A stretch of 64,000 nucleotides of DNA, from contig NW_003314309.1 in NCBI RefSeq assembly GCF_000143415.4, forward strand, positions 1,177,199-1,241,198, given 5' to 3'. Made by a program: the position numbers and the translations under genes. The notes beneath the pieces were generated by a model. It searched no databases. It saw only the letters and a list, made by a program, of their open reading frames with translations, and was not told where the DNA came from. Of this stretch, positions 1 to 36,837 are shown one piece after another (the stretch's first letter is position 1; each line of letters starts with the position of its first letter). Source of the DNA: Selaginella moellendorffii (taxonomy: Eukaryota; Plantae; Lycopodiophyta).

Positions 1-423
1 GCCATCTTTGGAACAGCACTGAGGTTTCCTGGTCTCAACACTTTGGGTCTCTCCATCGCCAGGCTCGACTTCCTTCCCGGAGGAATCATTCCCCCACACA
101 CCCATCCCAGAGCCTCGGAGATGGTCTACGTAGAAGAAGGGAGCGTCTACGCTGCCATTGTCACCGCGGACAATCGTTTGTTTGCTCGAGTGATGAACAG
201 AGGCGAAGTTATGGTGATTCCCCGAGGATTGATTCACTGGCAGATGAACGTTGGAAGAACAAATGCGAAGATCATTGCCACTCTCAACTCCCAATTTCCT
301 GGAATTCAATTTATTGGATCTTCCTTTTTTGGGTCTCGACCCCAAATCCCAAATGAGGTGCTCGAGAAGACTTTCTTCTTGGACGAGAACACAATCAATC
401 ATGTCCGATCCAACTTTATGTAA
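1..423 (+). CDS. Germin-like protein (cupin), 5' end outside the window
   Basis: Open frame from base 1 (AIFGTALRFPGLNTLGLSIARLDF). Germin box GIIPPHTHPRASE and PRGLIHWQMNVG. Close paralog of 5555..6208. Confidence 0.95.
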   Translation, partial: AIFGTALRFPGLNTLGLSIARLDFLPGGIIPPHTHPRASEMVYVEEGSVYAAIVTADNRLFARVMNRGEVMVIPRGLIHWQMNVGRTNAKIIATLNSQFPGIQFIGSSFFGSRPQIPNEVLEKTFFLDENTINHVRSNFM

Positions 424-995
424 AAATATTCATTTTTCTTTATAAAAGAAAAAATTTCAAGTCTTGAAATCGTAAGAGCAGGTTGCCCAGCATTTGCTGG
501 CCAATTTCTTTCCAAGACAAAAACTATAAATTTCCTTTCAGAGAAGATCACAGGCAACAAATTTCAGATCGTATAATTTCTGTTGGAAGCCTCATTCTCT
601 TCGCATAGAGGCTATGAGCCGTACTTTGAGTGATTGTATATCCACAAAGATCAATCATAAACTTTGGAGTAGGCAAAGATCATTGTCGAGCTACTTTGAC
701 CTGATCATGGATTCTTTTCTTTGTATTAAGACTTTCAGCTCATTAAACTCCTCGATTTAAAACAAAATCAAACACTTCAGCGTCATTACCAAGTTTGACT
801 GCCGAAGTTATTGATTAAAATTCTTTACATGGTCGGCGACCAAAATCGTGTTTCACGTTAGCCATCCATGAAAAAAAACTCTCAGCAAAGTTTCCAGTTA
901 TAAAAGCTGGAGTGCTTGGACAGCCAGAGCATTCAGCTTTTATTCAGCCAAGCACACGCATTTCACGTGTGTTTGGCACATGGGAGGGATGAATG

Positions 996-1113
996 GAGGA
1001 AATTCAGTTTATTCCAGCGTCCATGTTCGGTTCCAGTCCCGGCTGAGGTGCTCAAGAAGACCTTTATTTTGGATGAGAGGACCATCGAGCAAGTGCGATC
1101 CAAGTTCATTTGA
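996..1113 (+). pseudogene. Germin-like protein C-terminal fragment
   Basis: IQFIPASMFGS and, after a frame change, VPAEVLKKTFILDERTIEQVRSKFI* match the C-terminus of the two germins. No upstream germin box. Confidence 0.8.
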
Positions 1114-1224
1114 ATTTATTTAATATCTTCAAACTTAAAATGAAATCTAATTATTGAGCTTCCAGACCGTAAATCGTTGAGCAGAACTTGGTTGATTCGT
1201 CACAGAAGAAGATTTTGCGTGGAT

Positions 1225-2078
1225 TCATTTCTGGAAGTGAAGGGATGTGAGCAGGGTGCTCTGCTCCACATTGGACATGCGAGCATACAGGACCTGCTCG
1301 TTGACTTGGAGAAGATTAATGAGGTGAATGCACACCATGATTCCATCTCCAACAAGCTCGGAGCTTGTGTCGCCGAACTCGATCTGAAGCAGGATGTTAT
1401 GCGCACCAATGTCGTTGCTCACGTTGTCCGGATCTCGCCATGTCCCCGAGACGCCCACCTCGGTCACCGCCTTAAAAGCAAAACGCAGATCAAGTCGAAC
1501 TTAAAACATTCATAGACTAACCTGGAAGAAGTTGAAAGCGTATGCTTTCTTCTGTGGAACTGTGAGAGAAAGAAGCTCTCTTTGATCTCTGTCAAGGTTC
1601 ACGCTGCTCTCTGCGTCTCCAAACAGCAGAGCCCACAGCATATCCTTTGCATTTTCGAGCAGCATCTTCCCGGATTCCGTTCTGTGTTCATCTGAGATAG
1701 CGGCAAGGCCTTGGCCTGGTGCATCTTTGGTAAGATACCCCCTTGCTTTACCAAAACATTCCTCTGGCACTTGGGCCATTTTTCCTTGACCCATCCCAGG
1801 AGCATTTCCTCACTGATGCCCCCGCTCTGCTTGAGCCGCGAGATTATGTCCGACTGTGCATCTCCTACGATCTTAGAGACCTTCTCATTCGATGCCTTAC
1901 CGATTTGGCTATCCCTGTGCTTCAAAATGCTGATCCTGTCGCTTGCATTTTTGACACCGATGCTTTTGAGCAGATCATGGTTGAAGTCTGGGATGTGCTC
2001 CCCATTTAGCTCATTCTCATGGAACAGAATGGCATGTTTCTCCATGCTACATGGAGTTAACCAGCTCTTCCAATCCAT
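1225..2078 (-). CDS. SAM-domain protein with putative PII/GlnB-like C-terminal domain; one -1 frameshift near 1769 (pseudogene or sequencing error); intron 1471..1521
   Basis: The N-terminus DWKSWLTPCSMEKHAILFHENELNGEHIPDFNHDLLKSIGVKNASDRISILKH fits the SAM pattern. ORFs 1599..2108 and 1510..1794 join as KWPK-VPEEC if one G is restored. A GT..AG intron joins FNFFQ|AVTEVG in frame to ORF 1225..1467. Confidence 0.7.
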
Positions 2079-2477
2079 CTTGCGACTTGTGACTCTCCTA
2101 ATGAGCAATCCCTAAGTGCAGTAATGCTTTAAAAAGATAGAACTGACTTAAGCTGTGGGCCAAAGTTACTTGCACTATACTTGACTGTTATATTGAATTA
2201 TTATAATTTAAATAAAATTTATTATTTTCTACTTGTGAGTGCTCAGGATATGGGAATAAATATATAAAAATAAATAGACCAAATTCAATACTAAATTGCT
2301 ATGATGCTAACTTGTGATTGTTACATTGAATTATCATATTTTATATAAAAAGTATTACTTTCCACTTATGAGTGCTTGGGATGGGCATAAGTATATAAAA
2401 ATGGATGGATCAAATTCAATTTTAAATGGATGGTCCATGTGCTATAATGCTATAATTAATGTATTACTTAAGTAGGC

Positions 2478-2479
<2 letters not shown>

Positions 2480-2562
<83 letters not shown>
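2480..2562. repeat. (AT)n microsatellite
   Basis: About 40 uninterrupted TA units. Confidence 0.98.
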
Positions 2563-2564
<2 letters not shown>

Positions 2565-5554
2565 ATGAAAAAGTGATGATTATAAGTTAGGTGGAATATC
2601 TAAAGATCCTACTAAGCAATTATAAACTGCCATAAGAACTTAAACTCCTACATAACCACTAATATAGTAACTAACAATTATGATAGAAACAAAATCTAAA
2701 GTTATAGCATAAATATCAATTGATTATAAAATTTTGATAAACCAATTAGAATTACATATATAACTACTAAATGCTTAAACCAACTTTGAACCAAAGTAAA
2801 GGACTTTCAGAGTTACTAAAGTTTACAAAACACCGCTATAACAAATAATTTACCCTTTGGCCATCTATCAAGGCCATTATTAATTCAAACTCATGACCAT
2901 TAACAAAATCTATCTCTATATCTTCCATTTGGTCAAGATTTGAGCTTTGTGTTATTTTGAAATTCTAACCTTTTTTTTCGTCTAGCACCATACATGGGCA
3001 TTTCATTTATCTTACATATCCTCTTTATCCCCTTCTTGATGCAAAAAAGTTTTGAAACACACTACAATTATCCTCATTTTGTTATTTATATTTAGCCTCA
3101 CTTTACTATTGTATTCATTTAACTTTATTATGTTAAGGTTAAATGTTCAATTTGAACTCATTATGTTCATCCTTCTTTTACAATCCATGTCATTTTTTAT
3201 CATTCCACTACCATATCCACTCATCTTTATCCTATTGTTAGGGCTAGAATTTTGTCCATCCATCCCCTTTATGCCCTATTTTGAAAAAAATTTAAAATAT
3301 TAAAGTAAAAAAGGAAAAAGTGAATAAAGAAAAGAAGAAAAAAAAGTGGATAAAAAAGGAATTTTCAATAGCTGTAAAGGTGGATATAGGGAAGTAAAAA
3401 GAAGATATGTATTTAAAGCTTAGATAATAAGGGATATGCTGTTATAAAATACTGTAGCTACCATAAGATAAATAAGAGATTCACATTACTCAACTTTCTC
3501 GACATATAACTCAACACTTCATACAGGAAAATTTATAGAAAATTTATACTTTCAAAAGAATAAAAACTTCTCAGCAATAATAGTAAAATTAAGTCTTTTA
3601 ATGGCATTTATAATAAAAAATATCTACTTACCTCAAAACTTTGGTAGAAATGATTTAACCCTTAGAATAAAGGATATTCAATACTAGAATTAGTCGAATA
3701 CTCCATAACAAAATAAAAATAAAATTCTCAACTTCACATATATTCAACATTTAGATTAGTATGAGGAGGATAGAAAACACTCAACTCAAGTACTAAATTG
3801 AGAATGAGAATTATAATCAATATGTTAGAAGAAGGAAATATTGTAGATAAGGAAGAATACAAAGAATATAAGGTGGGTCAAATAGAGAAGTTTGGAAAAA
3901 ACAAAAGGTAAAAAGAAAAGATCAAATGGTAGTTTAAAGGATTGACATATATTTTCCAAAATCTCTAACTTATCTTCAAATATATCTCTATAATAATCAA
4001 GCTCCTTGTTACAATTCAAAATTCACTCAAATTTCTACACATTATTTTCTCATAAACTCAATTCTTGAACATTTTCCAAAAACTAAATTGTATTATTTAT
4101 AACTCTCCAATTAATAGTAAGGAGATATGGCAAGACAATAAATATAGAATATACTATGTAATCATGTTTTATAGAATTTGATGAGGGCAATATATCAAGG
4201 ATGGGCACAACATTTATATAGTCATGCCTCACAACACCAAAAGCTAGATTTAACAAAACAACATTAACAGCCTCAAGTGATAAACTCCTCAATTGATGAC
4301 AACGTGACATGACAAAAGAGGAGAATGCAATGGAGATTGAGAATGAAAAATAAATTTATAGCTATAATTTTTCTATAATATATTAATATTATATTTATAA
4401 TTAAAGACTTTATCAATTGAATAACATTGCTATTTCTATATGTAATATGCAATAAATTATTATAATAGTTATATTTTCAATATTAATGTTTTATTTACTA
4501 TAAAAAACTTGTCATTAAGAGAAGAGAAAATGACAAGATTAATAATAAAAACTTTTATCTAATTTAGGTATGGATATATGTTATTGTATAATAAGTTTTA
4601 AGTTTAAATATCATAAGTAGAAGTTTAGGATTCAATTCCTACCATGGCTAATAGTGGCTCCTCAATAAAAACATAGGCATAATAAATACATAATATCATG
4701 CTTCTTTATGATGCTAAGCATAGAGAAAGAACTTAAGTATTAATATGAAGACTAAGTTGGCTAGAACTATTAACAACATCGCAATGACTAATGAGAATTA
4801 AGATCATTATTGAAAAATGGAAAGTGATATGTTAGAAATTATTATAAGAAAACTCAGTAAATGAAGGAGATCAACTCAATCACCTTATTAATAGAAATTA
4901 AAACATAAAAAATATTACTTAAATTTTTTAGAAATACGCTCTGATTAGATGGTGAAAAGTTGATAATTTACTTTTGAGGCAAAGGAGGAAAGAAATAAAC
5001 ATTAAAAAAAGTTGGAAATAAATTTATAATCAGCTTGTCTTGGTTAAAAATTATTTTTCTGATAAATTAAAATCAAACAGAATTCCTAAAGAAACTGTAC
5101 ATTAGATGGACTATTAACTTTGATATCAGACCAAAGTTGTTTCTTTTCTAATGCTGGGGTGTAATTTTATAAAAGATTCACTTCATTTAGGGAATTGGGT
5201 TGTCCGAGTCATGTTTTCTTTTATTCAGCGTGATTCATAGAGTTAATCACTTAAGTCTATTTGCGAATTGTGTTTTCGATCACTGTGTATTAAGTTAAAA
5301 TCATAAGACCAGAAACACAGAATATTCTCAAAGCAGCTGACTTCGTCCAGCAAGCTCTACAATTTTCAAAACTCGCTGTTCCAATATAGTTGGCTCACTC
5401 GGTTGTCAAATTCTTACAATCCCAGCAACATCCAAGAAACGTACACATTGATAATCGTGTAACTTCTCAGTATATATATCTTCTCTCATCTCCAAGCGAA
5501 ATCATTCATTCATCCATCCTCTTCGAGATCCAAAAGTTTTTGATCAGTGAAAAG

Positions 5555-6208
5555 ATGGCTGTTTCCAAATCTCAAGCTCTTGGGATTGCCTTGCTCGCAA
5601 TCTTCGTCACTGTGGCAGTTTCATCCGATCCAGATCCACTCCAGGACTTTTGCATTGGAGACCTCACCGCTGTTCCAGGCGTCAATGGGTTCCCATGCAC
5701 GAACTCCTCGACAGTCACGGTGGACGATTTCATCTACAGCGGCATCGTCAATTCTTCCAACACCACGAACATCAATCGCTCCGGCGCCATCTTTGGGACA
5801 GTGCTGAGGTTTCCTGGTCTCAACACCTTGGGTCTCTCCATCGCCAGGCTCGACTTCCTCCCCGAAGGAATCATCCCCCCACACACCCATCCCAGAGCCT
5901 CGGAGATGGTCTACGTAGAAGAGGGCAGCGTCTACGCCGCCATCGTCACCGCGGACAATCGCTTGTTTGCTCGTGTCATGAACAGGGGCGAAGTCATGGT
6001 GATTCCTCGCGGATTGATCCACTGGCAGATGAATGTTGGGACTGGCAACGCGAAGATCATTGCCACTCTCAACTCCCAGCTGCCTGGAATCCAGTTCATC
6101 GCGAGATCCATGTTTGGTTCCCGTCCAGAGGTCCCAGACGAGGTGCTCGAGAAGACCTTCTTCTTGGACGAGGCCGCTATCAATCAAGTCCGATCCAACT
6201 TCGTTTGA
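5555..6208 (+). CDS. Germin-like protein, intronless, secreted
   Basis: Signal peptide MAVSKSQALGIALLAIFVTVAVSS, then DPDPLQDFC, germin box PPHTHPRASE and GLIHWQ. TATA-like tatatatat near 5471. Confidence 0.95.
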   Translation: MAVSKSQALGIALLAIFVTVAVSSDPDPLQDFCIGDLTAVPGVNGFPCTNSSTVTVDDFIYSGIVNSSNTTNINRSGAIFGTVLRFPGLNTLGLSIARLDFLPEGIIPPHTHPRASEMVYVEEGSVYAAIVTADNRLFARVMNRGEVMVIPRGLIHWQMNVGTGNAKIIATLNSQLPGIQFIARSMFGSRPEVPDEVLEKTFFLDEAAINQVRSNFV

Positions 6209-6655
6209 TCTTATCAGTAGCAAAGTTCTTCTTCTTGTATAATCTTATCCATTTGTTCTTTTCAATCGATCATTCTTCGTATAATCTCTGTAGAGCAAAA
6301 AAAATCCAAGGAAACGTTTGCTTGGCTAGAAAGAGTGACCTACCCGGAGCTTCCATCCAAGAGCCAAATCGAAAGGCGCCACCTGGCAGTGGTGCTCTTA
6401 CGCGGTGGTATATTCTATCCCCGGAAGGGAGAGTCCTAAAGTGTGTTCTTTGGATCTATTTTGTTCCTCCGCCCTCCTCCCTCCAGCTCGCCGCCGCCGG
6501 CAAGAGCGTCGCATCCGCCGGCGCCATCGCCATCGCCATCGCCTGTAGAAGCGCAGGTAAATCTTTCCCTTCTTGATCGATCCGCCTCGATCGAGCCTCG
6601 CCGGATTTCGAAAGGTCATAATCTCACGATCTTTGCTCAGAAGCGCAAGATCCGA

Positions 6656-9560: not shown

Positions 9561-10700
9561 ATGAGTCACTCCTTTCATTGTTTTTTTTTGGAAGAAAACA
9601 ATGTCTTTTTGTTTTTTTTTTTAATTCTTTTTTCTTTGCTAGTGATTTATGGTAATGCTTGTAATTTTGAAAAAAAATTGTGTCCTACTGGAATCTTTAG
9701 CTTTTCTGATTCACTTTCGGATACTGGTAATCGCAACCTCAGCAGCAGGGCTAGGTGCATTCAGTCTTTCTGGACATTTACCAGAATTACATTGGAAAAA
9801 CCCACTGAAAGATTTTGTGATGGGTATGATTATTTATCTCGTCAATTGAAGTTGCGTGATATTGAGCCTCTCAGTTTAACTTATAGTGGTACTTATTTCA
9901 CAAGTTTAAATTTTGGTTATGCTGGAGCAATTGTTCGTTCACCTTCTTTCGCTACTCCCCATATATTGTCTGCAGATTTTATATGGCATAAACAACAAGT
10001 TAATGACCATCAAAATGGTGCTAAACTTGATAAGAAAATGCTATATGAAAAAGCACTTTGTTATATTGAAATTGGTGGCAATGATCGTGGTTATGGAATG
10101 CCAGATTTTGCATATGTGATGAATAATACAATTCCAGCGGTAGTTAAGGGTATCAAATCTAGTATTATGGATTTATACAATTCTGATGCAAAATATTTTA
10201 TGGTAATGAATCTTCCTCGTTATGATTGTGCTCCTAGTTAATTACAATTATTTTCTGATGCTACTGGGATGCATTATGATAAATTTGGATGTCTTGTTAA
10301 GGCTAGAAATACTATTGATTTATTTAATAAGTAATTATTGGATATGGTAAATGATATTAACAATCAAAATCATGTTATTGAAGTATATTATTTTGATTGG
10401 TTTTCTGCAAGTAATAATATAATTGAAACCATGGAGCAATATGGATTTAAAAGTTATAAACAAGCTTGTTGTGGCATACCTGAAGGTGATTTCAATTGTG
10501 TTACTGATAATAATACAGCATTATGTGGTTGTGGATCACCGAGTGATACTGTATTCAACAATCCAAGTGAATGTTTATTATTTGATGGCACTCATTTCAC
10601 TCAGCAGTTTTATGAAGTTTCTTCTAAACTCATTCCCAATTATATTATTCCAACTGTGAGTTTATTGCCCGGCTGTGGAGTACCAATGCCATCCTCATAA
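9561..10700 (+). pseudogene. GDSL esterase/lipase pseudogene, intronless and AT-rich
   Basis: Blocks FSFSDSLSDTGN, NFGYAGA, IGGND and FDGTHFT. In-frame TAA stops at 10239 and 10332. Confidence 0.85.
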
Positions 10701-13458: not shown

Positions 13459-15884
13459 ATGGAGAATGGGACGCTCCTGGTGGACATCGCGCTCTCCATC
13501 CGTATGATCATTCATATGTGCGAGAGTGCCAAGTCGCAGCAGGGGAATTGCTTGGTCCTGGCAGCGCAGCTGCGGCTTCTCAAGCAGCTCTTTGATGAGC
13601 TCCGGCAGTCCAAGTTCCCGCTGTCCGACGCCACGATCGAGGCGTTTGGATCGCTCCAGTCGGCGCTCCAGGGGGCCAAGGAAGTTCTTGGGCAATGCAG
13701 CAAAGGAAGCAAGATCTACTCGGTAAGCTTCTCTTTGGGAAAGAAAATGGCACTGAAGTGTTTACTTTGGTTTGTCTCCTAGTTCTTGAAAAGTCCTCAA
13801 TGCGTGGACCAGTTCCAAGAGCTGAGCGCGGAGATCGAGACCATCCTTTCGGCGTCGCGACTAGTTTTGCCGAGAGTATCGAAGCAAGTCCAGTGCATGG
13901 TACGCACAGCCATGCTCTCGACAATCTCAAACTTATATTTTTGCTTTGTTGTTTCTTGTGCAACTTCCAGGCGGAGAACTGTGTCCTCGAGTTAAGAAAG
14001 GCAAGTTACTCCAAGGACGTGCTCGAAGAACAGATAAGACAAGAGATCGAGGCGCTGCTGTGCGATCACAGGGAAGGCAGGAAGGCCAGTCGTGAGAAGC
14101 TGGATAAGCTAGCTGGGTGCCTGGGAATCACCACCAAGGAACAGATATCTGAAGAGCTCAACGCGTTAGAGAAGGATCGAGGTGAGGCCGGGAGGAACAA
14201 AGACAAGCTGGAGGAAGAGTTTATCGACCAGGTGATATCACTCTTCATGCAGCTGGCCGAAGACAATTTCGACGATGGGGATGTCAAGGGTGAGACGCAG
14301 TCACAGGAGGTGCAAATCCCGGCAGACTTTCGATGCCCTCTGTCGCTGGAGCTTATGTATGACCCCGTAATCGTGGCTTCCGGACAGACTTATGAGAGGG
14401 CCTACATTCAGCACTGGTTGGATCAAGGGAACACTCGGTGTCCCAAGACAGGGAAACCGTTGGCACACATCAATCTCATACCGAACTATACCGTTAAGGC
14501 GTTGATAGCGAGCTGGTGCCAGACAAACGACGTTCCTTTGCCGAAAGTGGATGCTGTCAAGTCTACAAACTGGCTGCCACCAACGTTTTCCGAGGCAGAA
14601 GAGGCACGAGAGGATACCTCGGTCATTCCCAGTGGTCTGGATACTGACTGTGAGGAACGTAGCTCGGACCACGGTAGCTCGACTGGTATTGTCAGTGGCC
14701 GCAGAAAAGACAAAGATGATGTTTATGAGAAAAGGATGCCGAGCGGGCCTGTGATGAGAGTGAGATCCTCCAGCACGTACAGTAGCGAACTGTCTGGTGA
14801 AGTGGAGGCCCTGGGATTGTCACCGTCACGCAACAGTCCGGATCACTTTCCCATCTTCACGAGGCAAATGCAGTCGTCAAAGCAGAAAGAAAGGAAGAGC
14901 TATAAGAGCGTCTACGCAGGAGGTGATAAGGTAGCTGACGCTGGCATTGAACGGCTCGTTCAGAACCTGGCCTCTACGGACTTGGAGGCGCAGAGAAGTG
15001 CCGCTTCTGAGTTACGTGTGATGACCAAGAACAGTATCGAGGACAGAAACAGGATCGCCCATGCAGGAGGCATCACTCCCCTCATCGCTCTTCTTTCGTC
15101 CGGAGACGCACAGACTCAAGAGAACGCTGTAACCGCACTGCTGAACTTGTCTCTCAACGAGCACAACAAAGCCGAGATCGCCGAGGCTGGAGCGATTGAC
15201 CCGCTGATTGACGTCCTCAAGTCTGGGACCAGTGACGCGAGAGAAAATGCGGCAGCCACGCTTTGCAGTATTTCTGTGGAAGACTACAAGGAAAAAATCG
15301 GTGCTCGTGGCGCCATACCTCTACTGGTCGACTTGCTGAGAACTGGCACCCCACGGGGGAAAAAAGACGCAGCGTTAGCGCTACACAACCTTTCCTTGTT
15401 CCGGGAGAACAAGGTGAGGATAGTAGCGGCAGGAGGAGTGAAGCCACTGATAAATCTCATCTGCGAGCCGAGGATGGGAATGGTGGACAGGGCGGTTGAC
15501 GTGCTGGTAACGCTGTCGAGCATTCCCGAGGGGAGAATGGCCATCGGGGAAGAGGGAGGGATTCCTCCGCTGGTGGAAGTTGTGGAAGCTGGCTCGCCGC
15601 TCGCCAAAGAACGCGCTGCGGCCGCGCTCCTGCAATTGTGCACCAACAATCCCAAGTACAGGAGGACGACTTTGCAAGAGGGTGCTCTTCCTCCGCTATA
15701 TATTCTTTCACAAATTGGAACTTCTCGAGCAAAAGAAAAGGTCCGTCTTTTTTCTTCTTCTCTTTTCTTTTCTTCTTACTTTCCTTCTTTTTCTGTTTTG
15801 ACTCTTTTGTAGGCCGCTGGTATCCTTCGTCTTTTCAGGGAGCAGCGTCAAGCAAGCATGAGCCGTAGGAATAGGCATATGTAG
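13459..15884 (+). CDS. U-box/ARM-repeat E3 ubiquitin ligase (PUB2/3/4-like)
   Basis: N-terminal UND-like region, U-box IPADFRCPLSLELMYDPVIVASGQTYERAYIQHWL, multiple ARM repeats (TQENAVTALLNLS, RENAAATL, KKDAALALHNLS). Final exon AAGILRLFREQRQ. Confidence 0.95.
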
Positions 15885-24561: not shown

Positions 24562-27500
24562 CATAGCTTCAAAACACACAAACATGAACACGGCATTCAG
24601 TTTTTGAACATGAACACGAAACATGGAAATGAACACGGATAAACACGGGTGAAAACACGAATATTCTCTAGAATATTCTACTTATCACTCCATCTCATCT
24701 AGAAGCTCCTCATTAGCAGGATCATCATCTTCGTCTTCATCCTCTTCTTCCATAGCTTCAATATCAGCATTAGTAATTTGAGGAATACTTCCTGTTTGGC
24801 TCAATCCCACAAACTTGTCAAAGGAAGTGTGGCTCCCTATTAACTTGGTATTACTGGCCACAAATACCAAGTCTGCAATCCAGCTCACTGCTAAGCAATT
24901 CCTCTTCTTTGAAGTGATGTGCCCAAAAATGCTGAACAATCGCTCCACAGATGAGGAAGAACTTGCCTGACTAAGCACTCAAATTGCCAACCTCTGCAAA
25001 TCTGGACCTGAGTAGCCATTGTCCTCCCACCACTGCACAGAACCCTTTGTTGTACGATCCATCTGAGAGTCCCCAGTGCCAAAACTACCCTCCAAGTTCC
25101 TGTATTGGCAAAGCTGATTTTTTATAGTTGACCTTTGCTGATAGTCAGGGAACTAGATCTCCAAGTACATGTTCCAATCTTTGGAAACTTCCCTGGATTT
25201 TTCCTGTCCTCGCCCCTGAAACTCTGGATTAAGCATGTATGCCACGGAGTGAAAGGTGCTATGATAAGCCCACCACCTATTTGAAATCAGTTGGTTTAGC
25301 TCCTCATACCTAAGATTGTTCTCCTCTTGTTGACAGATGTTCTTTCTCATCTGATCCATCCCCTCGTAGACCTTCCCAATCACAGGCACGTCTCCGTCAA
25401 CCATCCGTAGCAAATACATCACCCTCCTTGAAACACCCAGCATGTGGTTAACCTCGTTCTAGTATGTATTGTTGAACACAATTCCTCAGTATGCTATCCC
25501 AGAATCTGTCCTTGACTCTAGCCTTGCATTGTAAGTGTCACTCACAAACATTTGTTGTAGCTTTGGCCTCAGCTCCACCAATCTCTCCATCATAAGAAAG
25601 TTGAAGGCGAATCGTGTTTCGCTGAACTTCAACACTCGTCGTGAAGAGAAGGATGCCAAAATCGCTACTAGATGCAAATGGTTCCGGAGGAAGCCAACCA
25701 GAGTCTTTCCCTTGTTTAGCAGCCCAACCATCCATGGTAGTTTTGTGAAATCCTTGAGAATGTTGTTCAAACAATGAGCTAAGCATGGAGCCCACATAAT
25801 CCTTGGCTTCCTCGCCTCTAGAAGCCTAGCAGCAGCCTTGTTTGAAGCCTCACCATCCGTGAAAATAAGAACAACATTCTCCTCTCCAACAATCTCGATA
25901 CCTCGCTCCCATGTCGCAAAAACGTTATCAGCCGTCTTCCCACTAGAAGATATATCAATGGCCTCGAGAAAAGTCGACTGTCCTCTGCTGTATGCAACAA
26001 GCCCCATGATATGTCGATTTCTTGTGTCATTCCATGCATCAGCAACAAGAGTAACCCCACAATTCTTCCAACATGCCTTCACCTTGGCAAGTTGAACTTT
26101 AAGATTGGCTTTCTCCACTTGCAACAATTGCTCTCGCAATGCTGTCTCTGTTGGAAGATCGTAGGGAATTCCATGCCTTGCAATCTGCTGCACCATCTCC
26201 TTGAAATGGTGAAAATGAGCTTTCACAAATGGTATGTGCTCGTTCCAAAAAAATTGTCCTATAGCCATATCCACTGCTTCCTTCCTTTTTGGATCAAAAG
26301 AATCCCGGATTCCCTACTGTCGTTGCAAAAAAAACCTGGAAATTCCTTCTACAGAATTGCCACCTGGTGTAGAACTCTAGGAAGCAACAAAACTCTCTCC
26401 TCCAGTGCTTTGGATGCCTTCGACACATGTAGAAACTGCTTGTTTCTTGCTTTGGTGTTTTCCAGCCAAAACCTGGTCGTCGATGGTTTTAGCCATCTCC
26501 CTAAGCTGTTGTCTCTTCTCTGCTGAGATGACATCACAACTTAAGATTTCATGACCATCCTGCACCTGTGAGATGTCCCCTCACACGATCCACACCTGAA
26601 CTTTGTCTCTCAACGACACCACTTGCAAGACTCAGCGTCGGCATGCACCACTACGGCAGTTTGTTTGATCACCAAGGATCACTCTTCCCACCAAACGGAT
26701 GATGGATGTCGCCCTGTTGAAGTCCTCCTACTCTGGCTCCCAGATGCCATCACTCAGCTCAACCTCTAAAATCCTGCACCTGCTTCTACTCCAATCCACA
26801 ATCACTTAGTCCAACCTCTAAAATCCCACACCCTGCTGCTGCTCCAATCCACAATTGCTCAGCCTCTAAAATCCCACACCCTGCTCCTGTTCCAATCCAC
26901 AATCGGTCACGCCCTGCGCCTAAAAAAATTTTGAAAAACTCAAAATTTTAGAATCATGCCGTCAATAACACAATCGCAATGCCAAGCAACTAAGAATCAC
27001 AGCAATCTACAAAGATGCAGTGCCAAGCAGCTAAGAATTATGGCAGAAGCAATCCAAGGAGAAAATTTGGGAGAGAAAATCTACAAACCTGGAGACAATG
27101 ATCAAGAATTTTTTGCAGCGAAATCAGGTGTGGCTGAGCGCCATTCCTCCCACTCCAGCGCTAGAATCCTAGAGAGGGCATTCCCAGCCCAAGAAAATCG
27201 CCATAGATCGCTGGAAAAACCTTTTGATTGATTGTAGGAATTTTTGATTGATCGCAAGACAAGAAAACATCAAAGCGCAAAACGCTCACGTAAACCACGT
27301 GAGCTATTGTTTTAGAACACGGCGTGGTCACACAGTATTTGACCGTGTTTCAACCGTGTTTGGAGCCGTGTTTTGGAGCATTGACCAAGTCAATGAACAT
27401 GGCCCGTGTTAACATGGCTGGGGGCCGTATAGCAGGGCCGATTCGGTTTTAGAGGGGAGGCAACGAGGCAATCAAGGAGCTCCTGCATGTCATGCACACG

Positions 27501-30707: not shown

Positions 30708-33700
30708 TGTGAGGGCCAAGTGTATGGCTATGATACCATATATTAATATTAGTGTAGTGGAATTTTGGTTGCTGTCGAATTAGTTTCAATCCAGACCACT
30801 CACAAACTATGGTTTTTGTGCTAATTGATATGCACATTTTTTGTATTCTCTTTCCATATTCCAAGTACTCACATTTGTGAAGGTGAGGGGCAACTTTCAT
30901 TGTCCTTGAGGAGTGCTTGGATTTGGGATTTTGGTTTAGATCTAGCTTTTTTCATTTCCTTTCTTTTATTCTTTCCTTTCAAGATTTTGGTTTAGATTTA
31001 CCTTTTCTATTATTTAGATCTCCCTTTCCTTTTAGTTTTTTCTCATTTCCCTTCTTTTGCTCTTTCCTTTTCATTTATCTTCATGGTAGAGTAGCAATCT
31101 CCTCCTTTGACTTTGGAGCAGCAATTGGTGCAATTGTTTGATGCCATGTGATTATAATTAAACAACCAAACTCTGATGGCAACATTCATGGCACGTGGTA
31201 CAACTCCCCCTAATTTTGGTGCCAATCCTCGCATTCGACTGGAGTTCTTTCGTGGGAATCCTGGGGATGATGTGTACCATTGATTCGATCACTTCATGGT
31301 GATTGCCACATATCATTCTTAGGATGATGCTTGACGTTTGTGTGAGTTTCCCACGTGTCTCCAAGGGACAGTGTTGCAATGGTACAATGGTTTGAGTGCA
31401 GCCACTCGTGGGGATTGGAGTATTTTCCCGAATAAAAATGCATTCGGACATACTGACAATTGTGATGATGCCTTCCAATAATTGCATTGTCTTCATTAAG
31501 GGCCATTTGAGTTTGTGATGCAATTTGGCATTTGTTTCTGAAGTTTCTTGCTTCATATAGAACCAAACATGTCGAAGCAGATCAAGCTAAGAATGTTGTG
31601 GCTAGCACTTCGTCAAGATCTTATCAGACTTGTGCATGCATTTGCTCTAGCCACCCTTGACGATGCTCTTCGCTTGGCACAACGTTATGAGACGTTGTGT
31701 CTTTCACTTCTCGCTGCACATTCTTCTACTCCACTTCTTGTGGGCAATGGTCCTATTCCAATGGAGGTTGATGCTATTGCTGCTCGAGTCTAAAGACAAG
31801 GGCGAGGACATGGTTGTGGCTGTGATGTTCACTGTTAGGCATGTGATGAAGTTGGTTATATTTATCGGTGTTGTCGGTGTTTTCCAGATTGACAACCTCC
31901 ATTTCTTGGGTGGAGACCTTGGCGTCAACAACGTCTTGTTGGTGCTGCTGCAGTGGAAGGTTTGGACACTGAGATACATTCAGGAAACGAGGAGTTGCGC
32001 GAGTAATAGAGGGACCTTGCACGAATAAGTCAGTAACCCCTCCATCTTTCTTTTGGGAGTATCATCAAAGGGTTCACTCGGCACTAGTTCATCCAGTGTT
32101 TACTTTCCCAGTTCATTTTTATAACAAAAGGTCTTCTATTATTCTCTCCATGTTGGTTGATACAAGTTCGAGTTTATCTTCTATTATTCGACTTATTGCC
32201 ACACGTTGCTGTCTACACTTGCATCATGTGGTGGAACCAGTTTTCATTTTTTATGGCAACGGCCGTACACATGCATGTGCACGGGATGAGGTGGACCTGG
32301 TTGTGTGTATGGGCAATCTCAAGCTTGGGTTGCAGTCATTGCGGGTGGTGCCAAGTCAAGCTTTTGATCTTATCCTTGGTATGGATTGGTTGCAACGTAA
32401 TCATGCCAAGTGTGACTTTGAGGCTTCTCCCCCTTGTCTCATACTTCCTTATATTTCATCTATTCCTCTCACTTCCGTACCTCTTTGTCCTGTAAGGAAC
32501 CAACTCCCCAAGGTGTCATAGGTTGAAGTATCCCCGAAAGCATGACCAAAATGACAAAGAGTTCATCGGATGGGACCGAGTCTGAGATCGAGTCCAAGAC
32601 CGACTTTGAGACTGAGTTCGAGATAGAGTCCGAGATCGAGTTTGAGGCCGACTCCGAGGCCGAGTTCGAGACCGAGTTCGAGACAGAGTCCGAGATCCGA
32701 GATCGGGTCTGAGACCAAGTCTGAGGCCGAGTCCGAAGTCAAGTCCGAGATTGGGTCCGAGATTGAGTCCGAGACCGAGTCCAAAGTCGGGTCCGAGATT
32801 GAGTCCGAGACCAAGTCCAAAGTCGGGTCCGAGATTGAGTCTGAGATCGAGTCCGAGTACTAATATAGGTCAAGGGGTCAAAGCCCAAAGCGTGTGTCTC
32901 CTGGGGGGGGGGGGGGGGGGGGGGGGGGCTACAGGGGGTTCCAAAAGTATAGTAGGGATAGTGAGGTCTAGGAACTAGTCTTGAAGAAACTCTTCAGTGG
33001 TGCTTCCAAACTAATTTGAGATTGAGACTGGGGCCGAAGGGCCTTGGGTGGGAGTGAGCATGGACTTGGGTGGTGTCGAAGGGGCTACCCAAGGAAGTGC
33101 TCAAGAGCAACTTTCACTCCTGAAAGGAAAACTGACTGCGGTGCTCCCAACTCATGTGGAGTGGTGCCCCACTTGAGTACCTTGCGGCTCATTGGTCCTC
33201 GCCCTTTTTAGGGGCTTGGGCCTTCCCTTCGGGATGGAAGTGGGGGGGTAGAGGTATCCATACCGGGGCATTAGGCCATAGTGTTTCGCCCCGGCATCCT
33301 GAAGCATGTGTTGCATCCAAGACTTGGGATATAGAGGGTCCCATGATCAAGTTTTGTTATACCAAGTGATGCTAAGAACCTGGAGGCTTGGTGTGCTTGG
33401 CTACTTGTGTCTGCGGGGAGTGTAGCCGAACTTTAAGTCCAGTCTAACCCGGGGAAGGGGTATTGAGAGAGATTTGGGAATCCGTGGATGGATGGCTAAC
33501 ACTTCGTTGCTCGTGCAGTGAGTAACTGAACCCAAGTAAGACTCAGTAGGAGTTGGTACAATAGGCGAGAACCTTGGCGAGGGAACTTAATTAAAGCCAA
33601 GGCAGTGTTGGTCGAATAGACGAGGTAAGCTGGCAAATTGGAAAGGAAAAATTTATGGCTTACATGTCCCTCTACTTTTACTTTTGCTTCCATTACTTTT

Positions 33701-36700
33701 GTCCCCCCACTATTTCCTCCTATATTTCCGTCTTGTTCTACTCTTCTCTTTTCCAATCCCTTCGACCATCTTTGTGTTGTAACAATTGACCGGCTCATGA
33801 AGGAGTATTCTGATCTCTTTAAATTTGATCTATCGTCTAGGGCCAAGATTGCCACACATCATCCAATTCCAATCAGGGATGCTCATCCAATCAATGTTCC
33901 TATTCATCGTCGGTCACCCAAAGAAATCAAGATTTTACTTGCAAATATTAAGGAGATATTGGAGAAGGATGTAATTTAGAAGTTGTAGAGTCCTTAGGCA
34001 TATGAACTTCATCTTGTGATAAAGCCTAATGGGAGTATTTGTTTCTGCATCGACTATCGTCCGTTAAACGAAGTGACAATCTCGGATGTGTACTCTCTTC
34101 CTCACACTGCTAATCTCTTGGATCGTCTAAGGCAAAGTCGTTGGTTCACCAAGCTCGATCTTGCTTCTGGGTACTGGCAAATACCAATGGCTGAAAAAAT
34201 ATTCCTAAGACTGCTTTTTGTACATTGTTTGGTTTGTACGAGTTCTTGGTAATGCCGTTTGGTTTGAACAATACTCCAGCAACTTTCCAGCAGATGATAG
34301 AAGAGGTTCTTTGCAATATGCCGAAGATGACTGTTGACTTCATTGATAATATCTTGATCCACTCATAAGGGAGGTGGGAGGAGCACATTCGTGATGTTTG
34401 TAAAGTGTTGGATCGGCTATAGGATATTGGTTTAAAGCTGAAGCAGTCAAAATGTGTGTTTGGGTCCAAGGACACAACTTATCTTGGGTATTGTATTTCT
34501 CGTGAGGGTTTGCAAATTGATCATGACAAACTTGTGGCTGTTCTAAAGTTCATTACTCCGAAGTGTGTGAATGATGTGTAGTGCTTTCTGAGCAAAATGT
34601 AGTATCTTGGTTGTTTTATGGATCATCTTTCTAATTGCACTACACCATTGCAAGTGTTGCTGAAGTCATCAACGTCATCTTTCATCTAGTATTTGGATTG
34701 TGAGTGGGCGTTCATGGATCTCAAAGAGCTCTTGACGACTCCTCCAGTTTTGGTATATCCTAACTACACTCAACTTTTTATTTTGCATGTGGATTTGGTC
34801 TTAGAGGTATGTTAATGCAAGAAAGCCTAAGTGTGCTTGGTCAGTGCCATCCCATTGCATATATAAGCCGTACATTACAACCAGCAGAGGTAAACTACTC
34901 CACGACAAAGAAGGAGTGTTTAGCAACAATCTGGGGTTTCAAGAAACTTCATGTATATCTACATGGTTCTCGTATGTTACTTGAAGGTGATCATGTTGCC
35001 ATTACTTCATTATTGAAGCGAAAGAACCTGGTTGGTCATACTGTTTGGTGGGCTTTAAAGCTTCAGATATATGATTTTGATGTTGTTCATCGTCCAGGGA
35101 GTTATATGGTTGATGCTGATGCCCTTTTTCGAGTTCTTCTTTCTTCTCCACTCTCTTTTTATATTTCTGACGAACTTATTGTTCCAACATCTATGGATTT
35201 TCTAAATGAGGATTCTGTGCCATCGGCAGTTGCTATACTTGACGTTCAGTATCCACAAGGTGCAAAACAAGATTTACCTTTTCTTGATGAGGCTCAAAAG
35301 CTTGAGCTATAGATTCGAAGGCTTCAAGATGGGTTTGAGAATCTTACATCACTTATTAATGACTTGCCATTCCAACATTTACATTCTTAGTATCGCCTTA
35401 AAGATGGCCTTCTTTATTTTATGGGGACAGATCCTAATAATCTTTTATGGCTAGTGGTGTTTTTTGTCTTTATTCCACAGTTTCTCCATGTCTACCATGA
35501 TTCTCTTGTTCTAGGTGGGCATATGGGACATCGTCGTATGACCGAGAAGCTACGCAGGTCTTTCTATTGGCCAGAGATACAACGTGATGTTATCCGGTAT
35601 GTGCGTAGCTATGTTTGGTGCCAAACTCATAATACTTCCCTTTATGCTACAGAACGATGATTGGAGTCAATTGCAATTTCCCGTCCATTTGAGTTGGTGG
35701 CATTTGATCTTATGGGACCTTTTCCACAGTCGACTGCTGGCAATGAGTATGTTATTATTACTTTTGACAACTTGATTTGTTGGGTAGAAGTTGGTGCTCT
35801 TGCTAGTGCCTCTGCAACTGTTGTTGGATACTTCCTCCTCAATCGAGTGGTGTTCCAACATTCTTGTCCAGAGCAGATTCTTTCGGATAATGGTCCTGCA
35901 TTTATGGCTAAGGCATTTCATATTTTGATGTCTCGGTTGGGGATATGCCACACTTTCATGAGTGCTTATCATCCACAATCAAACAGTCTAGTGGAATTGT
36001 TCGTTTGGACATTTAAAGAGATGATTGCGAAATATGTGAACTTTCAGCATTTAAATTAGGACAGTTATTTGCTGTCTCTTCGGTATGCATATATCATAAG
36101 GGTGCAGAGTTCTGTTGATGCTTCACTATATAAACTCCTATATGGTCATGATCTAATATTACCAACAAAGTTGGGTTTACCTTCGCAATTGCCACAAACT
36201 GCTGATGCTAGGTCGTGGGATCAGTATTTGATGAGCATTTTTCCACTTGTCTAAGCAAAGTTTGCTGAACACTTAGGCCACGTACAAGTGGGACAACAAT
36301 GACACTACAATTCCCATTATTGTCCACCTGCAAAGTACAAAGTGGATGACTTGGTATTAGTCCATTTTCCCCATTTTACGGTATGTGGTTTATTTAAGAG
36401 GCTCTTTATTTAGTGGAAAGGACCATATCAAGTGTTGCGGCAAGTTAGACCACAAGTTTATGAAGTTCAACATGACGTCCAGCAAGCTGATCCTTTAGAG
36501 ATTGTGCATGTGCAACAGTTGAAACGCTTCATACAAAGGGATTAGGAGCAATTAATACCACCTATAAATCCACTGATGCCTCCTCCTGACATTCCTCCAG
36601 ATCCCAGCTCATCTACAAGAGAACCTTAATGGTCTTCCATTATTCCAAGAGGAGGGGATGATGTGAGGGCCAAGTGTATAGTTATGATGCTGTATACTAA

Positions 36701-36837
36701 TATTAGTGTAGTGAGATTTTAATAACTGTCGGATTGGTTTCAATCTGGACCACTCACTTCTATATATAAACTAGAGTTTTTGGGCTAATTGATATGTACA
36801 TTTTTTGTATTCCCTTTCCATATTCCAAGTATTCACA
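30708..36837 (+). mobile_element. Full-length degenerate Ty3/gypsy LTR retrotransposon (gag-PR-RT-RH-INT), LTRs 30708..30873 and 36662..36837, TSD CCTT
   Basis: TG...CA LTR pair and PPT aagaggaggggatga. GPIPMEVD, LVDTSSS, FCIDYRPLN, KLDLASGYWQI, MPFGLNN, FIDNILI, PIAYISRTL..AEVNYSTT, GGHMG, ILSDNGPAF, SAYHPQSN, KGPYQV. Many stops. Confidence 0.95.
32491..33664. mobile_element. Nested solo LTR (TGTAAG...CTTACA, 5-bp TSD TGTCC) inserted between PR and RT
   Basis: tgtcc|tgtaagg ... ggcttaca|tgtcc. Interrupts the pol region. Contains a hexamer array at 32570..32860 and a G25 tract at 32903..32927. Confidence 0.85.

What the first reader, a model, noticed from the sequence alone, without database searches (positions are those of the whole stretch)
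1225..2078. Hidden SAM-domain + PII/GlnB-like fusion gene inside a germin cluster (possible bacterial-origin signalling or enzyme module)
Seen: three separate ORFs merge into one ~267-aa protein using one GT-AG intron (1471..1521) and one restored G (KWPK-VPEE, ~1769). Its N-terminus matches a SAM domain. Inference: the last ~100 aa follow the PII/GlnB ferredoxin-like topology. b1 ELLSLTVPQKK compares with KKIEAIIRPFK; b2 AVTEVGVSGTW with GMTVSEVKGFG; then a T-loop; b3 NILLQIEFGD with KVKIEIVV.D; a helix; and b4 VLYARMSNVEQST with KIFVSPVEEVI. The GTW and EQ.LY pattern is closer to DUF3574 or phage S-adenosylmethionine-lyase-type members than to canonical PII. I do not recognise this architecture among plant genes. 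The C-terminal part reminds me of bacterial/cyanobacterial hypothetical proteins (recollection, unverified). A polymerising SAM domain fused to a trimeric ligand-binding or enzymatic fold could be an undescribed sensor/effector.
Basis: partly seen in the sequence, partly recalled or inferred. Interest (0 to 1): 0.85.

Follow-up and report, generated by a model that had tools for sequence, protein, structure and literature searches.

The report
Frameshifted SAM plus PII-like gene copy
This is a transcribed but frameshifted copy of a spikemoss gene whose intact twin encodes a SAM domain fused to a bacterial-type module with a PII-like fold and unknown function; among named eukaryotes that module turned up only in liverworts, mosses and lycophytes.

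Summary
The three minus-strand ORFs at 1225-2078 are one Selaginella moellendorffii gene, already annotated with two wrong models: SELMODRAFT_420938 (251 aa) and LOC9647430 (172 aa). Pfam confirms the SAM domain. RNA-like contigs from three studies splice out the 51-nt intron 1471-1521. The frame break is real, but it is a 2-nt surplus in a G5 run at 1738-1742, not a lost G near 1769. An intact 266-aa copy, SELMODRAFT_410658, lies on a colinear scaffold, is 98% identical in the gene, and appears in the same RNA runs.

Residues from about 74 to the end have no Pfam, NCBIfam or PADLOC family. They match bacterial ~248-aa hypothetical proteins (Chloroflexota, Actinomycetota, Cyanobacteria and others) at up to 58% identity. 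SAM-bearing versions form one clade. The named ones come from Marchantia, Ceratodon, Diphasiastrum and Selaginella.

AlphaFold (pLDDT 92.5) gives four helices followed by a beta-alpha-beta-beta-alpha-beta domain. Every match to that domain among the 50 best rows of the unfiltered structure search is a PII-like protein, a protein that shares that fold, or a design, but the scores are modest (Z 5-6.7).

Function is untested. I infer an oligomeric ligand-binding or catalytic module. The scan did not note this gene elsewhere.

The parts
1225..2078 (-). Whole coding span of the window's copy (start codon at 2078, stop at 1225-1227), with one real intron and one frame break.
   Evidence: ORF list and sequence. 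100% match to SELMODRAFT_420938.
1914..2066 (-). SAM domain, residues 5-55.
   Evidence: Pfam SAM_2 at 30.3 bits (cut-off 20.5), with SAM_1 and SAM_4 weaker. Coordinates.
1738..1742 (-). G5 run (C5 on the + strand) that carries 2 letters more than the intact copy. This is the frame break.
   Evidence: Homologue alignment. 'Left out 2' at 1738 in contigs of all four runs. Direct alignment to the GL377578.1 copy.
1692..1738 (-). The 47-nt 'intron' of GenBank model EFJ17646. It is not removed in any RNA contig seen, and it encodes the conserved loop YLTKDAPGQGLAAIS in the second frame (1693-1737).
   Evidence: Contigs run straight across it (records 4-6, 16-18, 23-25). The loop holds the near-invariant residues L, P and G.
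1599..1601 (-). Premature stop in the window's own frame. The predicted product is 159 aa: 113 native residues plus 46 out of frame.
1471..1521 (-). Real GT-AG intron of 51 nt.
   Evidence: Joint 1469->1521 in contigs of X1, X3 and X7, absent from the DNA-like X11. Sequence.
1627..1859 (-). Helical segment shared with bacterial homologues (residues ~74-150 of the intact reading). It contains the frame break.
   Evidence: Alignments. AlphaFold helices 9-22, 26-39, 42-47 and 70-88 of the model.
1249..1584 (-). GlnB/PII-like beta-alpha-beta-beta-alpha-beta domain (residues 165-259 of the intact reading), interrupted by the intron. Motifs: GTWRDP at 1429-1446, VNEQVLYAR at 1279-1305, NVEQSTL at 1252-1272.
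   Evidence: AlphaFold model with pLDDT 92.5. Structure searches. Conservation map. Coordinates.
1156..2110 (-). Stretch covered by contigs of the RNA-like runs, i.e. the transcribed span seen.
   Evidence: table 8 (records 16 and 19 of X3).
43..423 (+). Germin-like (Cupin_1) ORF flanking the gene on the left. A further germin C-terminal fragment lies at about 1000-1113.
   Evidence: Pfam Cupin_1 E 1.2e-36. ORF list.
5555..6208 (+). Full germin-like gene flanking on the right.
   Evidence: Translation. The 96.7%-identical stretch of L093 carries a called Cupin_1 gene.

Best explanation
What it is (shown, about 0.9). The locus is one copy of a Selaginella moellendorffii gene. Its intact form (SELMODRAFT_410658, 266 aa) has an N-terminal SAM domain, then about 195 aa shared with ~248-aa bacterial hypothetical proteins. 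That shared part is a four-helix segment followed by a C-terminal beta-alpha-beta-beta-alpha-beta domain.

The window's copy carries two extra G in a G5 run (1738-1742). Its own reading frame therefore ends after 159 aa: the SAM domain, part of the linker and 46 out-of-frame residues. This copy is still transcribed and its 51-nt intron is spliced. The intact copy sits on a colinear scaffold and is probably the other haplotype.

Origin (inferred, about 0.7). The module entered an early land-plant lineage from bacteria. The bacterial N-terminal helical segment was exchanged for a SAM domain. The gene survives in liverworts, mosses and lycophytes.

How it works (inferred, about 0.35-0.4). The beta domain is a PII/GlnB-like module that assembles into an oligomer, most likely a trimer. 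It would bind a small phosphorylated or nucleotide-like ligand in clefts lined by the near-invariant residues at four places: the end of strand 2 (G-x-W-x-D-P), the helix 2-strand 4 loop (N-x-L-x-x-N-E), strand 4 (Y-x-R) and the C-terminal tail (E-x-x-T-L). These are the positions that correspond by topology to the T-loop base, the B-loop and the C-terminus of PII proteins. In plants the SAM domain would add head-to-tail self-association. The protein would then act as a ligand-controlled assembly or scaffold.
For: Identity and gene structure.

Frame break and intact copy:
- 'Left out 2' at 1738 with linked changes in four runs.
- The rebuilt reading equals P0275 over that stretch.
- GL377578.1 is colinear with window 1-6450. 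The gene is 98% identical, with 9 synonymous and 7 conservative replacement changes.

Transcription and splicing.

The family:
- 189 representatives at E<=1e-3 in an exhaustive HMMER search.
- 182 bacterial loci confirmed, with up to 58% identity.
- No Pfam, NCBIfam or PADLOC model.

Plant side:
- Among the 150 best representatives, only the plant-type proteins have a SAM-like N-terminus.
- Named members are from Marchantia, Ceratodon, Diphasiastrum and Selaginella. They sit on multi-Mb plant scaffolds or chromosomes.
- Plant rows form one clade with SH-aLRT 99 in two trees.
- Plant and bacterial N-termini are unrelated by hhalign (probability 0.2%).

Fold:
- AlphaFold pLDDT 92.5 and pTM 0.87.
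- In the unfiltered comparison with 48,161 chains, every match to the beta domain among the 50 best rows is a PII-like protein, a protein that shares that fold, or a design. The remaining rows align the helices.
- In the second look at Foldseek's best 1000 chains, 48 of the 50 rows are PII-like proteins. The two others are a designed cage and a ribosome entry.

Ligand or catalytic site:
- 22 near-invariant polar residues, including five Arg and two Lys, concentrated on the loops named above.

Modularity:
- Stand-alone ~130-aa versions exist.
- Fusions to a GH3 domain and to zinc ribbons exist.

General properties of PII-like proteins (trimers, ligand at the T-loop clefts, occasionally enzymes): PMC10890737, which cites PMC7877911.
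Against: - Structural scores are modest: Foldseek E 4e-3 or worse, TM about 0.5 by target, Z no higher than 6.7. The tool's own note says Z under 8 can reflect a common arrangement.
- No family member matched the Pfam P-II model in the lists returned.
- The strand 2-strand 3 loop is about 8 residues in the model, whereas the PII T-loop has about 19 (my knowledge). The G-D-G-K type B-loop motif of PII (my knowledge) is absent.
- I had no coordinates. I therefore could not test whether the conserved residues cluster, or whether the N-terminal helices block the face used for trimerisation.
- No trimer model could be run.
- Bacterial neighbours are not conserved, so context says nothing about function.
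- The tree does not place the plant clade inside any bacterial group. The AU test does not reject bacteria as one clade (p 0.62).
- Absence from seed plants, ferns and algae rests on named database hits only.
Confidence: 0.62

Rival explanations
1. The module is an enzyme rather than a sensor. The oligomer interface forms an active site, as in phage SAM lyases, which have a PII-like fold. The many invariant Arg, Lys, Asp, Glu, Asn and Tyr residues would be catalytic or substrate-binding.
For: - 22 near-invariant polar residues, and 45-58% identity between plants and bacteria, which indicates very strong constraint.
- SAM lyase chains appear among the structural matches: 6zm9 at Z 5.1 and 9lqe at E 0.038.
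- Two distant members touch DUF3574 below threshold, and Atlas shows DUF3574 at TM 0.48.
- PII-like proteins with enzymatic activity are known (PMC7877911, PMC9974498).
Against: - SAM lyase scores are lower than those of the non-enzymatic PII-like proteins.
- No sequence match to any enzyme family.
- Fusion to varied N-terminal modules (SAM, GH3, zinc ribbon) looks more like a regulatory or binding module.
- No metabolic gene neighbourhood.
Confidence: 0.22
2. The beta domain is simply a ferredoxin-like fold with no evolutionary or mechanistic link to PII proteins. The module works through protein-protein or nucleic-acid contacts, with SAM as a second interaction domain.
For: - Z no higher than 6.7 and Foldseek E no better than 4e-3, within the zone of common arrangements.
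- No P-II Pfam signal.
- Short strand 2-strand 3 loop and short helix 1.
- The top row of the wide search is a helical match.
Against: Among the very many ferredoxin-like folds in the PDB, the matches to the beta domain in the top 50 rows were PII-like proteins and proteins sharing that fold, not ACT, RRM or ferredoxins. Conserved residues fall on the loops that form the PII ligand cleft.
Confidence: 0.15
3. The window's copy is intact and functional as annotated (251 aa), because a 47-nt intron (1692-1738) removes the frame problem.
For: The stretch starts with GT and ends with AG. Introns of about 50 nt occur in this genome: the neighbouring real intron is 51 nt.
Against: RNA-like contigs of three studies run unspliced across 1692-1738, and no such joint was reported. 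The skipped 15 residues are conserved in all homologues and hold three near-invariant residues. The intact copy encodes them in frame.
Confidence: 0.03
4. The frame break is an assembly or sequencing error in the reference, and only one, intact, form exists in the plant.
For: The difference lies in a homopolymer run.
Against: Contigs identical to the window across 1690-1835 (G5 form) occur beside the G3 form, each with its own linked base changes. This holds in runs X1, X3 and X7, from three studies (records 5/6, 17/18, 24/25). The neighbouring tandem copy (LOC9647429) is also modelled from the second-frame ORF only.
Confidence: 0.03
5. The module was inherited vertically (ancient eukaryotic or plastid/cyanobacterial origin) and lost many times, rather than transferred from bacteria into early land plants.
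For: Cyanobacteria (Okeania, Dapis, Xenococcus) have the family. The tree does not nest plants within a bacterial group with support, and the AU test leaves plants outside all bacteria as acceptable.
Against: No alga or other eukaryote appeared among the named hits. Cyanobacterial rows sit deep inside a Chloroflexota-dominated clade, far from the plant clade. Plant-bacterium identity of 45-58% is high for an ancient split.
Confidence: 0.1

Closest known systems
Canonical PII signal proteins (GlnB/GlnK, Pfam P-II PF00543)
   Same: Beta-alpha-beta-beta-alpha-beta domain of about 100 residues. Structural alignment over 83-93 residues at Z 5.4-6.0 and rmsd 2.8-3.4 A. Conserved residues lie at the topological equivalents of the T-loop base, the B-loop and the C-terminus.
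   Different: - No P-II Pfam match.
- Strand 2-strand 3 loop of about 8 residues instead of a long T-loop.
- Short helix 1.
- An obligatory four-helix segment in front.
- An extra N-terminal module (SAM in plants, an unrelated helical segment in bacteria).
- Oligomer and ligand unknown.
PII-like proteins: NIF3 inserted domain (3lnl, 2gx8), CPII (5drk), SbtB (6mm2), CutA1, PstA, DUF3240 (3ce8)
   Same: These are the best structural matches to the beta domain: Z 5.6-6.6, rmsd 1.7-3.0 A over 74-90 residues, covering nearly the whole small chains.
   Different: Sequence identity is 7-16%. No sequence-level link. None of them carries the motifs G-T-W-R-D-P or V-N-E-Q-x-L-Y-A-R. None has the helical segment or a SAM fusion.
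Phage SAM lyase (Svi3-3, 6zm9; 9lqe) and Pfam DUF3574
   Same: Same fold class. Weak matches: Z 5.1, Foldseek E 0.038, Atlas DUF3574 cluster at TM 0.48. Two distant family members hit DUF3574 at E 0.0084 and 0.19.
   Different: All values are below family thresholds (16.4 bits against a cut-off of 25). The main family and the plant proteins give no DUF3574 hit. No evidence of lyase residues.
Podospora anserina BP (het-B), a eukaryotic PII-like protein whose nearest non-fungal relatives are bacterial (PMC10890737)
   Same: A PII-like module in a eukaryote lineage with bacterial affinity and a patchy distribution. Function in the eukaryote is largely unknown.
   Different: BP is a small stand-alone protein recognisable as PII-like by sequence. 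The gene here is a separate family, fused to SAM, in land plants.
SAM-domain fusion proteins that couple self-association to another module (for example SARM1 in animals, LEAFY's SAM-like oligomerisation domain in plants; my knowledge)
   Same: An N-terminal SAM domain that passes Pfam thresholds, placed before a second functional module.
   Different: The partner module is new for SAM fusions as far as I could find. Whether this SAM domain polymerises was not tested.

Membership tests
SAM domain (Pfam PF07647 SAM_2) | Profile match above the curated cut-off. | tested here: met
   30.3 bits against a cut-off of 20.5, residues 5-55. Also met in P0003, P0004, P0010 and others.
SAM domain | Self-association or polymer formation. 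| not testable with these tools
   No multimer prediction or experiment was available.
Canonical PII (GlnB/GlnK, PF00543) | Profile match to P-II, including the signature B-loop motif. | tested here: not met
   No P-II hit in the per-protein scans. P-II was not among the 25 most frequent families listed for the 72 members scanned at E<=10. The helix 2-strand 4 loop reads N-L-L-Q/E-V-N-E-Q.
Canonical PII (GlnB/GlnK, PF00543) | Long flexible T-loop between strands 2 and 3. | tested here: not met
   The model has strand 2 at 124-132 and strand 3 at 141-155, so the loop is about 8 residues.
GlnB/PII-like superfamily (fold level) | Beta-alpha-beta-beta-alpha-beta domain that superposes on PII-like structures better than on other ferredoxin-like folds. 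| tested here: inconclusive
   All matches to the beta domain in the top 50 of an unfiltered search are PII-like proteins, proteins sharing that fold, or designs. Z is 5.0-6.7 and rmsd 1.7-3.4 A. These values are under the level (Z 8) that the tool regards as clear.
GlnB/PII-like superfamily | Trimer with ligand sites in the inter-subunit clefts. | not testable with these tools
The only indication is that the conserved loops are topologically equivalent.
DUF3574 (PF12098) | Profile match above the curated cut-off of 25 bits. | tested here: not met
   Best is 16.4 bits (E 0.0084) in P0131 and 12.1 bits in P0109. None in the main family or the plant proteins.
Phage SAM lyase | Structural and sequence similarity to Svi3-3/T3 SAMase, and SAM cleavage. 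| tested here: inconclusive
   Z 5.1 to 6zm9 and Foldseek E 0.038 to 9lqe. No sequence match. Activity not testable.
Genes of land plants acquired from bacteria | A true plant gene (introns, plant scaffold), a single plant clade, a broad bacterial distribution, and absence from other eukaryotes. | tested here: inconclusive
   - Met: spliced intron and plant neighbours; plant clade at 99; 182 bacterial loci in at least six phyla.
- Not resolved: nesting within bacteria (AU p 0.62).
- Absence elsewhere rests on named hits only.

The most novel reading that the evidence does not exclude
The ~195-aa module is an undescribed branch of the PII-like superfamily: a four-helix segment plus a GlnB-like domain with its own invariant loop motifs. 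It senses or converts a nucleotide-like metabolite in soil and freshwater bacteria. The ancestor of land plants captured it from bacteria and fused it to a polymerising SAM domain. That would create a ligand-controlled assembly kept only in bryophytes and lycophytes (a core gene in Marchantia) and lost in the lineage leading to seed plants.
Probability: 0.25. Interest if true: 0.7.

Novelty: new variant of a known kind. Interest (0 to 1): 0.5.

Why it matters
At family level, this is a strongly conserved protein module (45-58% identity between plants and bacteria). It has no Pfam, NCBIfam or PADLOC model and no literature that I could find. It occurs in hundreds of bacterial lineages and, fused to SAM, in the non-seed land plants used as models (Marchantia Mp1g11380, Ceratodon, Selaginella).

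If the PII-like reading holds, it adds a new architecture to a superfamily known for metabolite sensing. It also adds one more candidate to the set of bacterial genes taken up early in land-plant evolution.

At locus level the result is practical. Both public gene models of this copy are wrong. The copy is frameshifted. The intact gene to study is SELMODRAFT_410658.

Tried and rejected
- Single-sequence AlphaFold of the 251-aa GenBank model: useless (pLDDT 36).
- ESM Atlas feature searches with the C-terminal part, the intact protein and a bacterial member: nothing usable, or only SAM families.
- Sequence searches of the PDB with the protein and with a 72-row profile: no meaningful hit.
- NCBIfam and PADLOC: blank.
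- BFVD fold search: only weak small phage proteins of unknown function, and LANA-type matches.
- Gene neighbourhood in bacteria: no conserved neighbour. The best neighbour cluster appears in 9 of 83 loci, and no recurrent same-strand partner exists.
- A lead from RibD_C and pterin genes near three annotated loci: it did not recur in the 80 genome loci.
- Bridging to DUF3574 through relatives of P0131: failed, because only one relative was found.
- Weak PRA-PH hits in 4 of 72 members (best E 0.0016): treated as noise.
- Rooting the tree with the distant short subfamily: put plants next to Streptomyces (SH-aLRT 88), but the AU test does not support nesting. No donor is named.
- Homology between the plant SAM N-termini and the bacterial N-termini: rejected by hhalign.
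- Gene identifiers in 8.4 million papers: no hits in main texts. One Marchantia pangenome table lists Mp1g11380 as a core gene with only a SAM annotation.
It was repeated with the 17-row alignment.
Full report
**The locus**

The finding lies on the minus strand. Three ORFs (1599-2108, 1510-1794, 1225-1467) read in series from the ATG at 2078 to the stop at 1225-1227. The first 103 residues are identical to GenBank protein SELMODRAFT_420938 of Selaginella moellendorffii (P0001, 251 aa). A tblastn of that protein finds only this one copy in the window. Pfam places a SAM domain at residues 5-55 (SAM_2, 30.3 bits, cut-off 20.5). The flanks carry germin-like genes: Cupin_1 at 43-423, a fragment near 1000-1113, and a full gene at 5555-6208.

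**Gene structure**

Contigs of three RNA-like runs from three studies join 1469 to 1521 (51 nt, GT..AG on the minus strand). The DNA-like run reads straight through. This also shows that the gene is transcribed from at least 2110 to 1156.

In an alignment with 16 homologues the first frame remains homologous through W-P-K-C-Q-R-N-V-L-V-K-Q-G. The second frame takes over at Y-L-T-K-D-A-P-G-Q-G-L. That puts the break in the G5 run (C-run 1738-1742 on the + strand).

In all four runs a second form lacks 2 letters at 1738 and carries linked base changes. Rebuilding that form in a script gives an open 266-aa reading. Over that stretch it equals SELMODRAFT_410658 / XP_002969987 (P0275, 266 aa), which sits on scaffold GL377578.1.

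That scaffold is colinear with window 1-6450 apart from a 5.4-kb insertion. Within the gene the two copies differ by 9 synonymous changes, 7 conservative replacement changes, 1 intron change and the 2-nt indel (98% identity). I take them for the two haplotypes of the assembly. A recent segmental duplicate is not excluded.

The window's own frame stops after 159 aa: 113 native residues plus 46 out of frame, with the stop at 1599-1601. The G5 form is not an assembly error. Contigs identical to the window across 1690-1835 occur beside the G3 form in runs X1, X3 and X7, which come from three studies.

**Public gene models**

Both models of this copy are artefacts of the break.
- EFJ17646 skips it with a 47-nt "intron" (1692-1738). 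No RNA contig removes this stretch. It encodes 15 residues conserved in every homologue, three of them near-invariant.
- RefSeq XP_024542184 (172 aa) starts at a Met inside the second frame.

A tandem neighbour on the same scaffold (SELMODRAFT_420937 / LOC9647429) is modelled in the same truncated way. It has Arg in place of the invariant Trp of G-T-W-R-D-P. It lies outside the window.

**The family**

An exhaustive HMMER search with residues 104-251 of P0001 found 189 representatives at E<=1e-3. Most are bacterial proteins of about 248 aa. None has a Pfam, NCBIfam or PADLOC family.

A scan of one genome per prokaryotic species confirmed 182 loci. They are in Chloroflexota, Actinomycetota (Streptomyces, Microbacteriaceae, Nocardioides), Cyanobacteria (Okeania, Dapis, Xenococcus), Saprospiraceae and Acidobacteria, plus two bins titled Klebsiella. 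Identity to Selaginella residues 113-244 reaches 58%.

Homology between plant and bacterial proteins runs from about plant residue 74 to the end, roughly 195 aa. The N-termini differ: SAM in plants, and another helical segment in bacteria with no profile-profile similarity (hhalign probability 0.2%). Shorter stand-alone versions (~130 aa) exist, as do fusions to a GH3 catalytic domain and to zinc ribbons. I found no conserved gene neighbour in bacteria.

**Distribution in eukaryotes**

Among the 150 best representatives only the plant-type proteins have a SAM-like N-terminus. The named members are:
- Selaginella moellendorffii
- Diphasiastrum complanatum
- Ceratodon purpureus
- Marchantia polymorpha (Mp1g11380)
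- Marchantia paleacea

They sit on multi-Mb scaffolds or chromosomes. About fifteen further unnamed members come from metagenome or run assemblies. No seed plant, fern, alga or other eukaryote was among the named hits. This is not proof of absence.

In two trees the SAM-bearing rows form one clade (SH-aLRT 99). With a distant subfamily as outgroup they sit next to Streptomyces rows (88, unstarred). The AU test does not reject a tree with all bacteria together (p 0.62). Cyanobacterial rows are far from the plant clade.

My reading is a single acquisition from bacteria by an early land plant, followed by exchange of the N-terminal segment for SAM and later loss in the lineage leading to seed plants. 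The donor is unresolved. Contamination is excluded by the spliced intron, the SAM fusion and the plant neighbours.

**Fold**

With a 72-row alignment, AlphaFold models residues 66-275 of the 68%-identical intact homologue P0003 at pLDDT 92.5 and pTM 0.87. The elements, in model numbering, are:
- helices 9-22, 26-39, 42-47 and 70-88
- strand 101-110
- short helix 111-117
- strands 124-132 and 141-155
- helix 160-177
- strand 183-188

Foldseek against the PDB gives no hit below E 1e-3. Its list is led by the NIF3 inserted domain, GlnK, CutA and related proteins, and it includes a SAM lyase. In the unfiltered comparison with 48,161 chains, every match to the beta domain among the top 50 is a PII-like protein, a protein sharing that fold, or a design: DUF3240, CPII, PEPE_1480, NIF3, SbtB, HisG C-domain, CutA, SAM lyase and TM0021, at Z 5.0-6.0. 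The other rows align the helices. The second look at Foldseek's own matches gives Z 6.6 (rmsd 1.7 A over 74 residues) for NIF3 3lnl, Z 6.5 for CPII, and Z 5.4-6.0 for GlnK, SbtB, CutA and PstA. The Atlas search returns NIF3, DUF3574 and P-II clusters at TM 0.23-0.56 by the matched row.

These scores lie in the range that the tool itself calls ambiguous. What counts is the consistency of the matches, not their height. The family is not canonical PII:
- It has no P-II profile match.
- The strand 2-strand 3 loop is about 8 residues.
- The PII B-loop motif is absent (the motif itself is from my knowledge).

The suggested closeness to DUF3574 or SAM lyase rests only on sub-threshold hits in two distant members and on lower Z values.

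**Mechanism (inferred)**

Across 76 plant and bacterial sequences, 41 positions are at least 95% conserved. Of these, 22 are polar, including five Arg and two Lys. In the beta domain they lie at:
- the end of strand 2 (G-x-W-x-D-P)
- the start of strand 3 (D, N)
- the helix 2-strand 4 loop (N-x-L-x-x-N-E)
- strand 4 (Y-x-R)
- the tail (E-x-x-T-L)

By topology these correspond to the T-loop base, the B-loop and the C-terminus, which form the ligand clefts of PII trimers. The properties of the superfamily are as summarised in PMC10890737. PII-like proteins with enzymatic activity are described in PMC7877911 and PMC9974498.

I therefore favour an oligomeric ligand-binding module (about 0.35-0.4) over an enzyme (about 0.2) or an unrelated ferredoxin-like interaction domain (about 0.15). 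In plants, SAM would add self-association. None of this could be tested here.

**Verdict**

Four corrections apply:
- The gene is already annotated, though with wrong models.
- The function is open.

The window's copy itself is a frameshifted, still-transcribed allele or duplicate. The interest lies in the family. My look-ups in the scan's earlier notes found no note on this gene or family.

Noticed in passing
left of window position 1 (same scaffold; not in the window): A tandem twin, SELMODRAFT_420937 / LOC9647429 (167 and 172 aa models), is also modelled only from the second-frame ORF. It therefore probably carries the same frameshift. It has Arg in place of the family's invariant Trp (G-T-R-R-D-P). 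The duplication seems to have come after the frameshift.
   Followed up: partly
window 30712-36829, and L093 4150-9138: The intact copy's scaffold has a ~5.4-kb insertion between the gene and its right-hand germin. The insertion is 83-85% identical to window 30712-36829, so it is a dispersed repeat, probably a transposable element.
   Followed up: no
window 2480-2563: Long (TA)n microsatellite in an AT-rich, gene-free stretch just upstream of the gene's 5' end.
   Followed up: no
window 916-1113: Short ORF whose end resembles the C-terminus of the germin-like ORF at 43-423. It looks like a germin gene fragment between the germin and the SAM gene. It has no Pfam hit on its own.
   Followed up: partly
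window 13695-15812, 61182-63011, 25486-26274, 9561-10241: Other genes in the window by Pfam: a plant U-box/ARM E3 ligase, a PPR protein with an E motif, a DUF659 (hAT-transposase-related) ORF, and a weak GDSL-lipase ORF.
   Followed up: no
proteins P0113 and P0120 (database hits, not in the window): Distant members of the family are fused to a glycoside hydrolase family 3 catalytic domain (501 aa) or to double zinc ribbons (318 aa). The beta domain is thus a mobile module.
   Followed up: partly
L085 1550-2872 (JGI metagenome contig): In a close relative (P0002) the SAM exon is a separate ORF, and the rest of the protein is one ORF with no intron at the Selaginella position. Intron positions therefore differ among plant members.
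   Followed up: no
window 1638: All four runs, including the DNA-like one, show only the base of the intact copy at this position. No contig with the window's base was seen there. Contigs can drop variants, so this may mean nothing.
   Followed up: no
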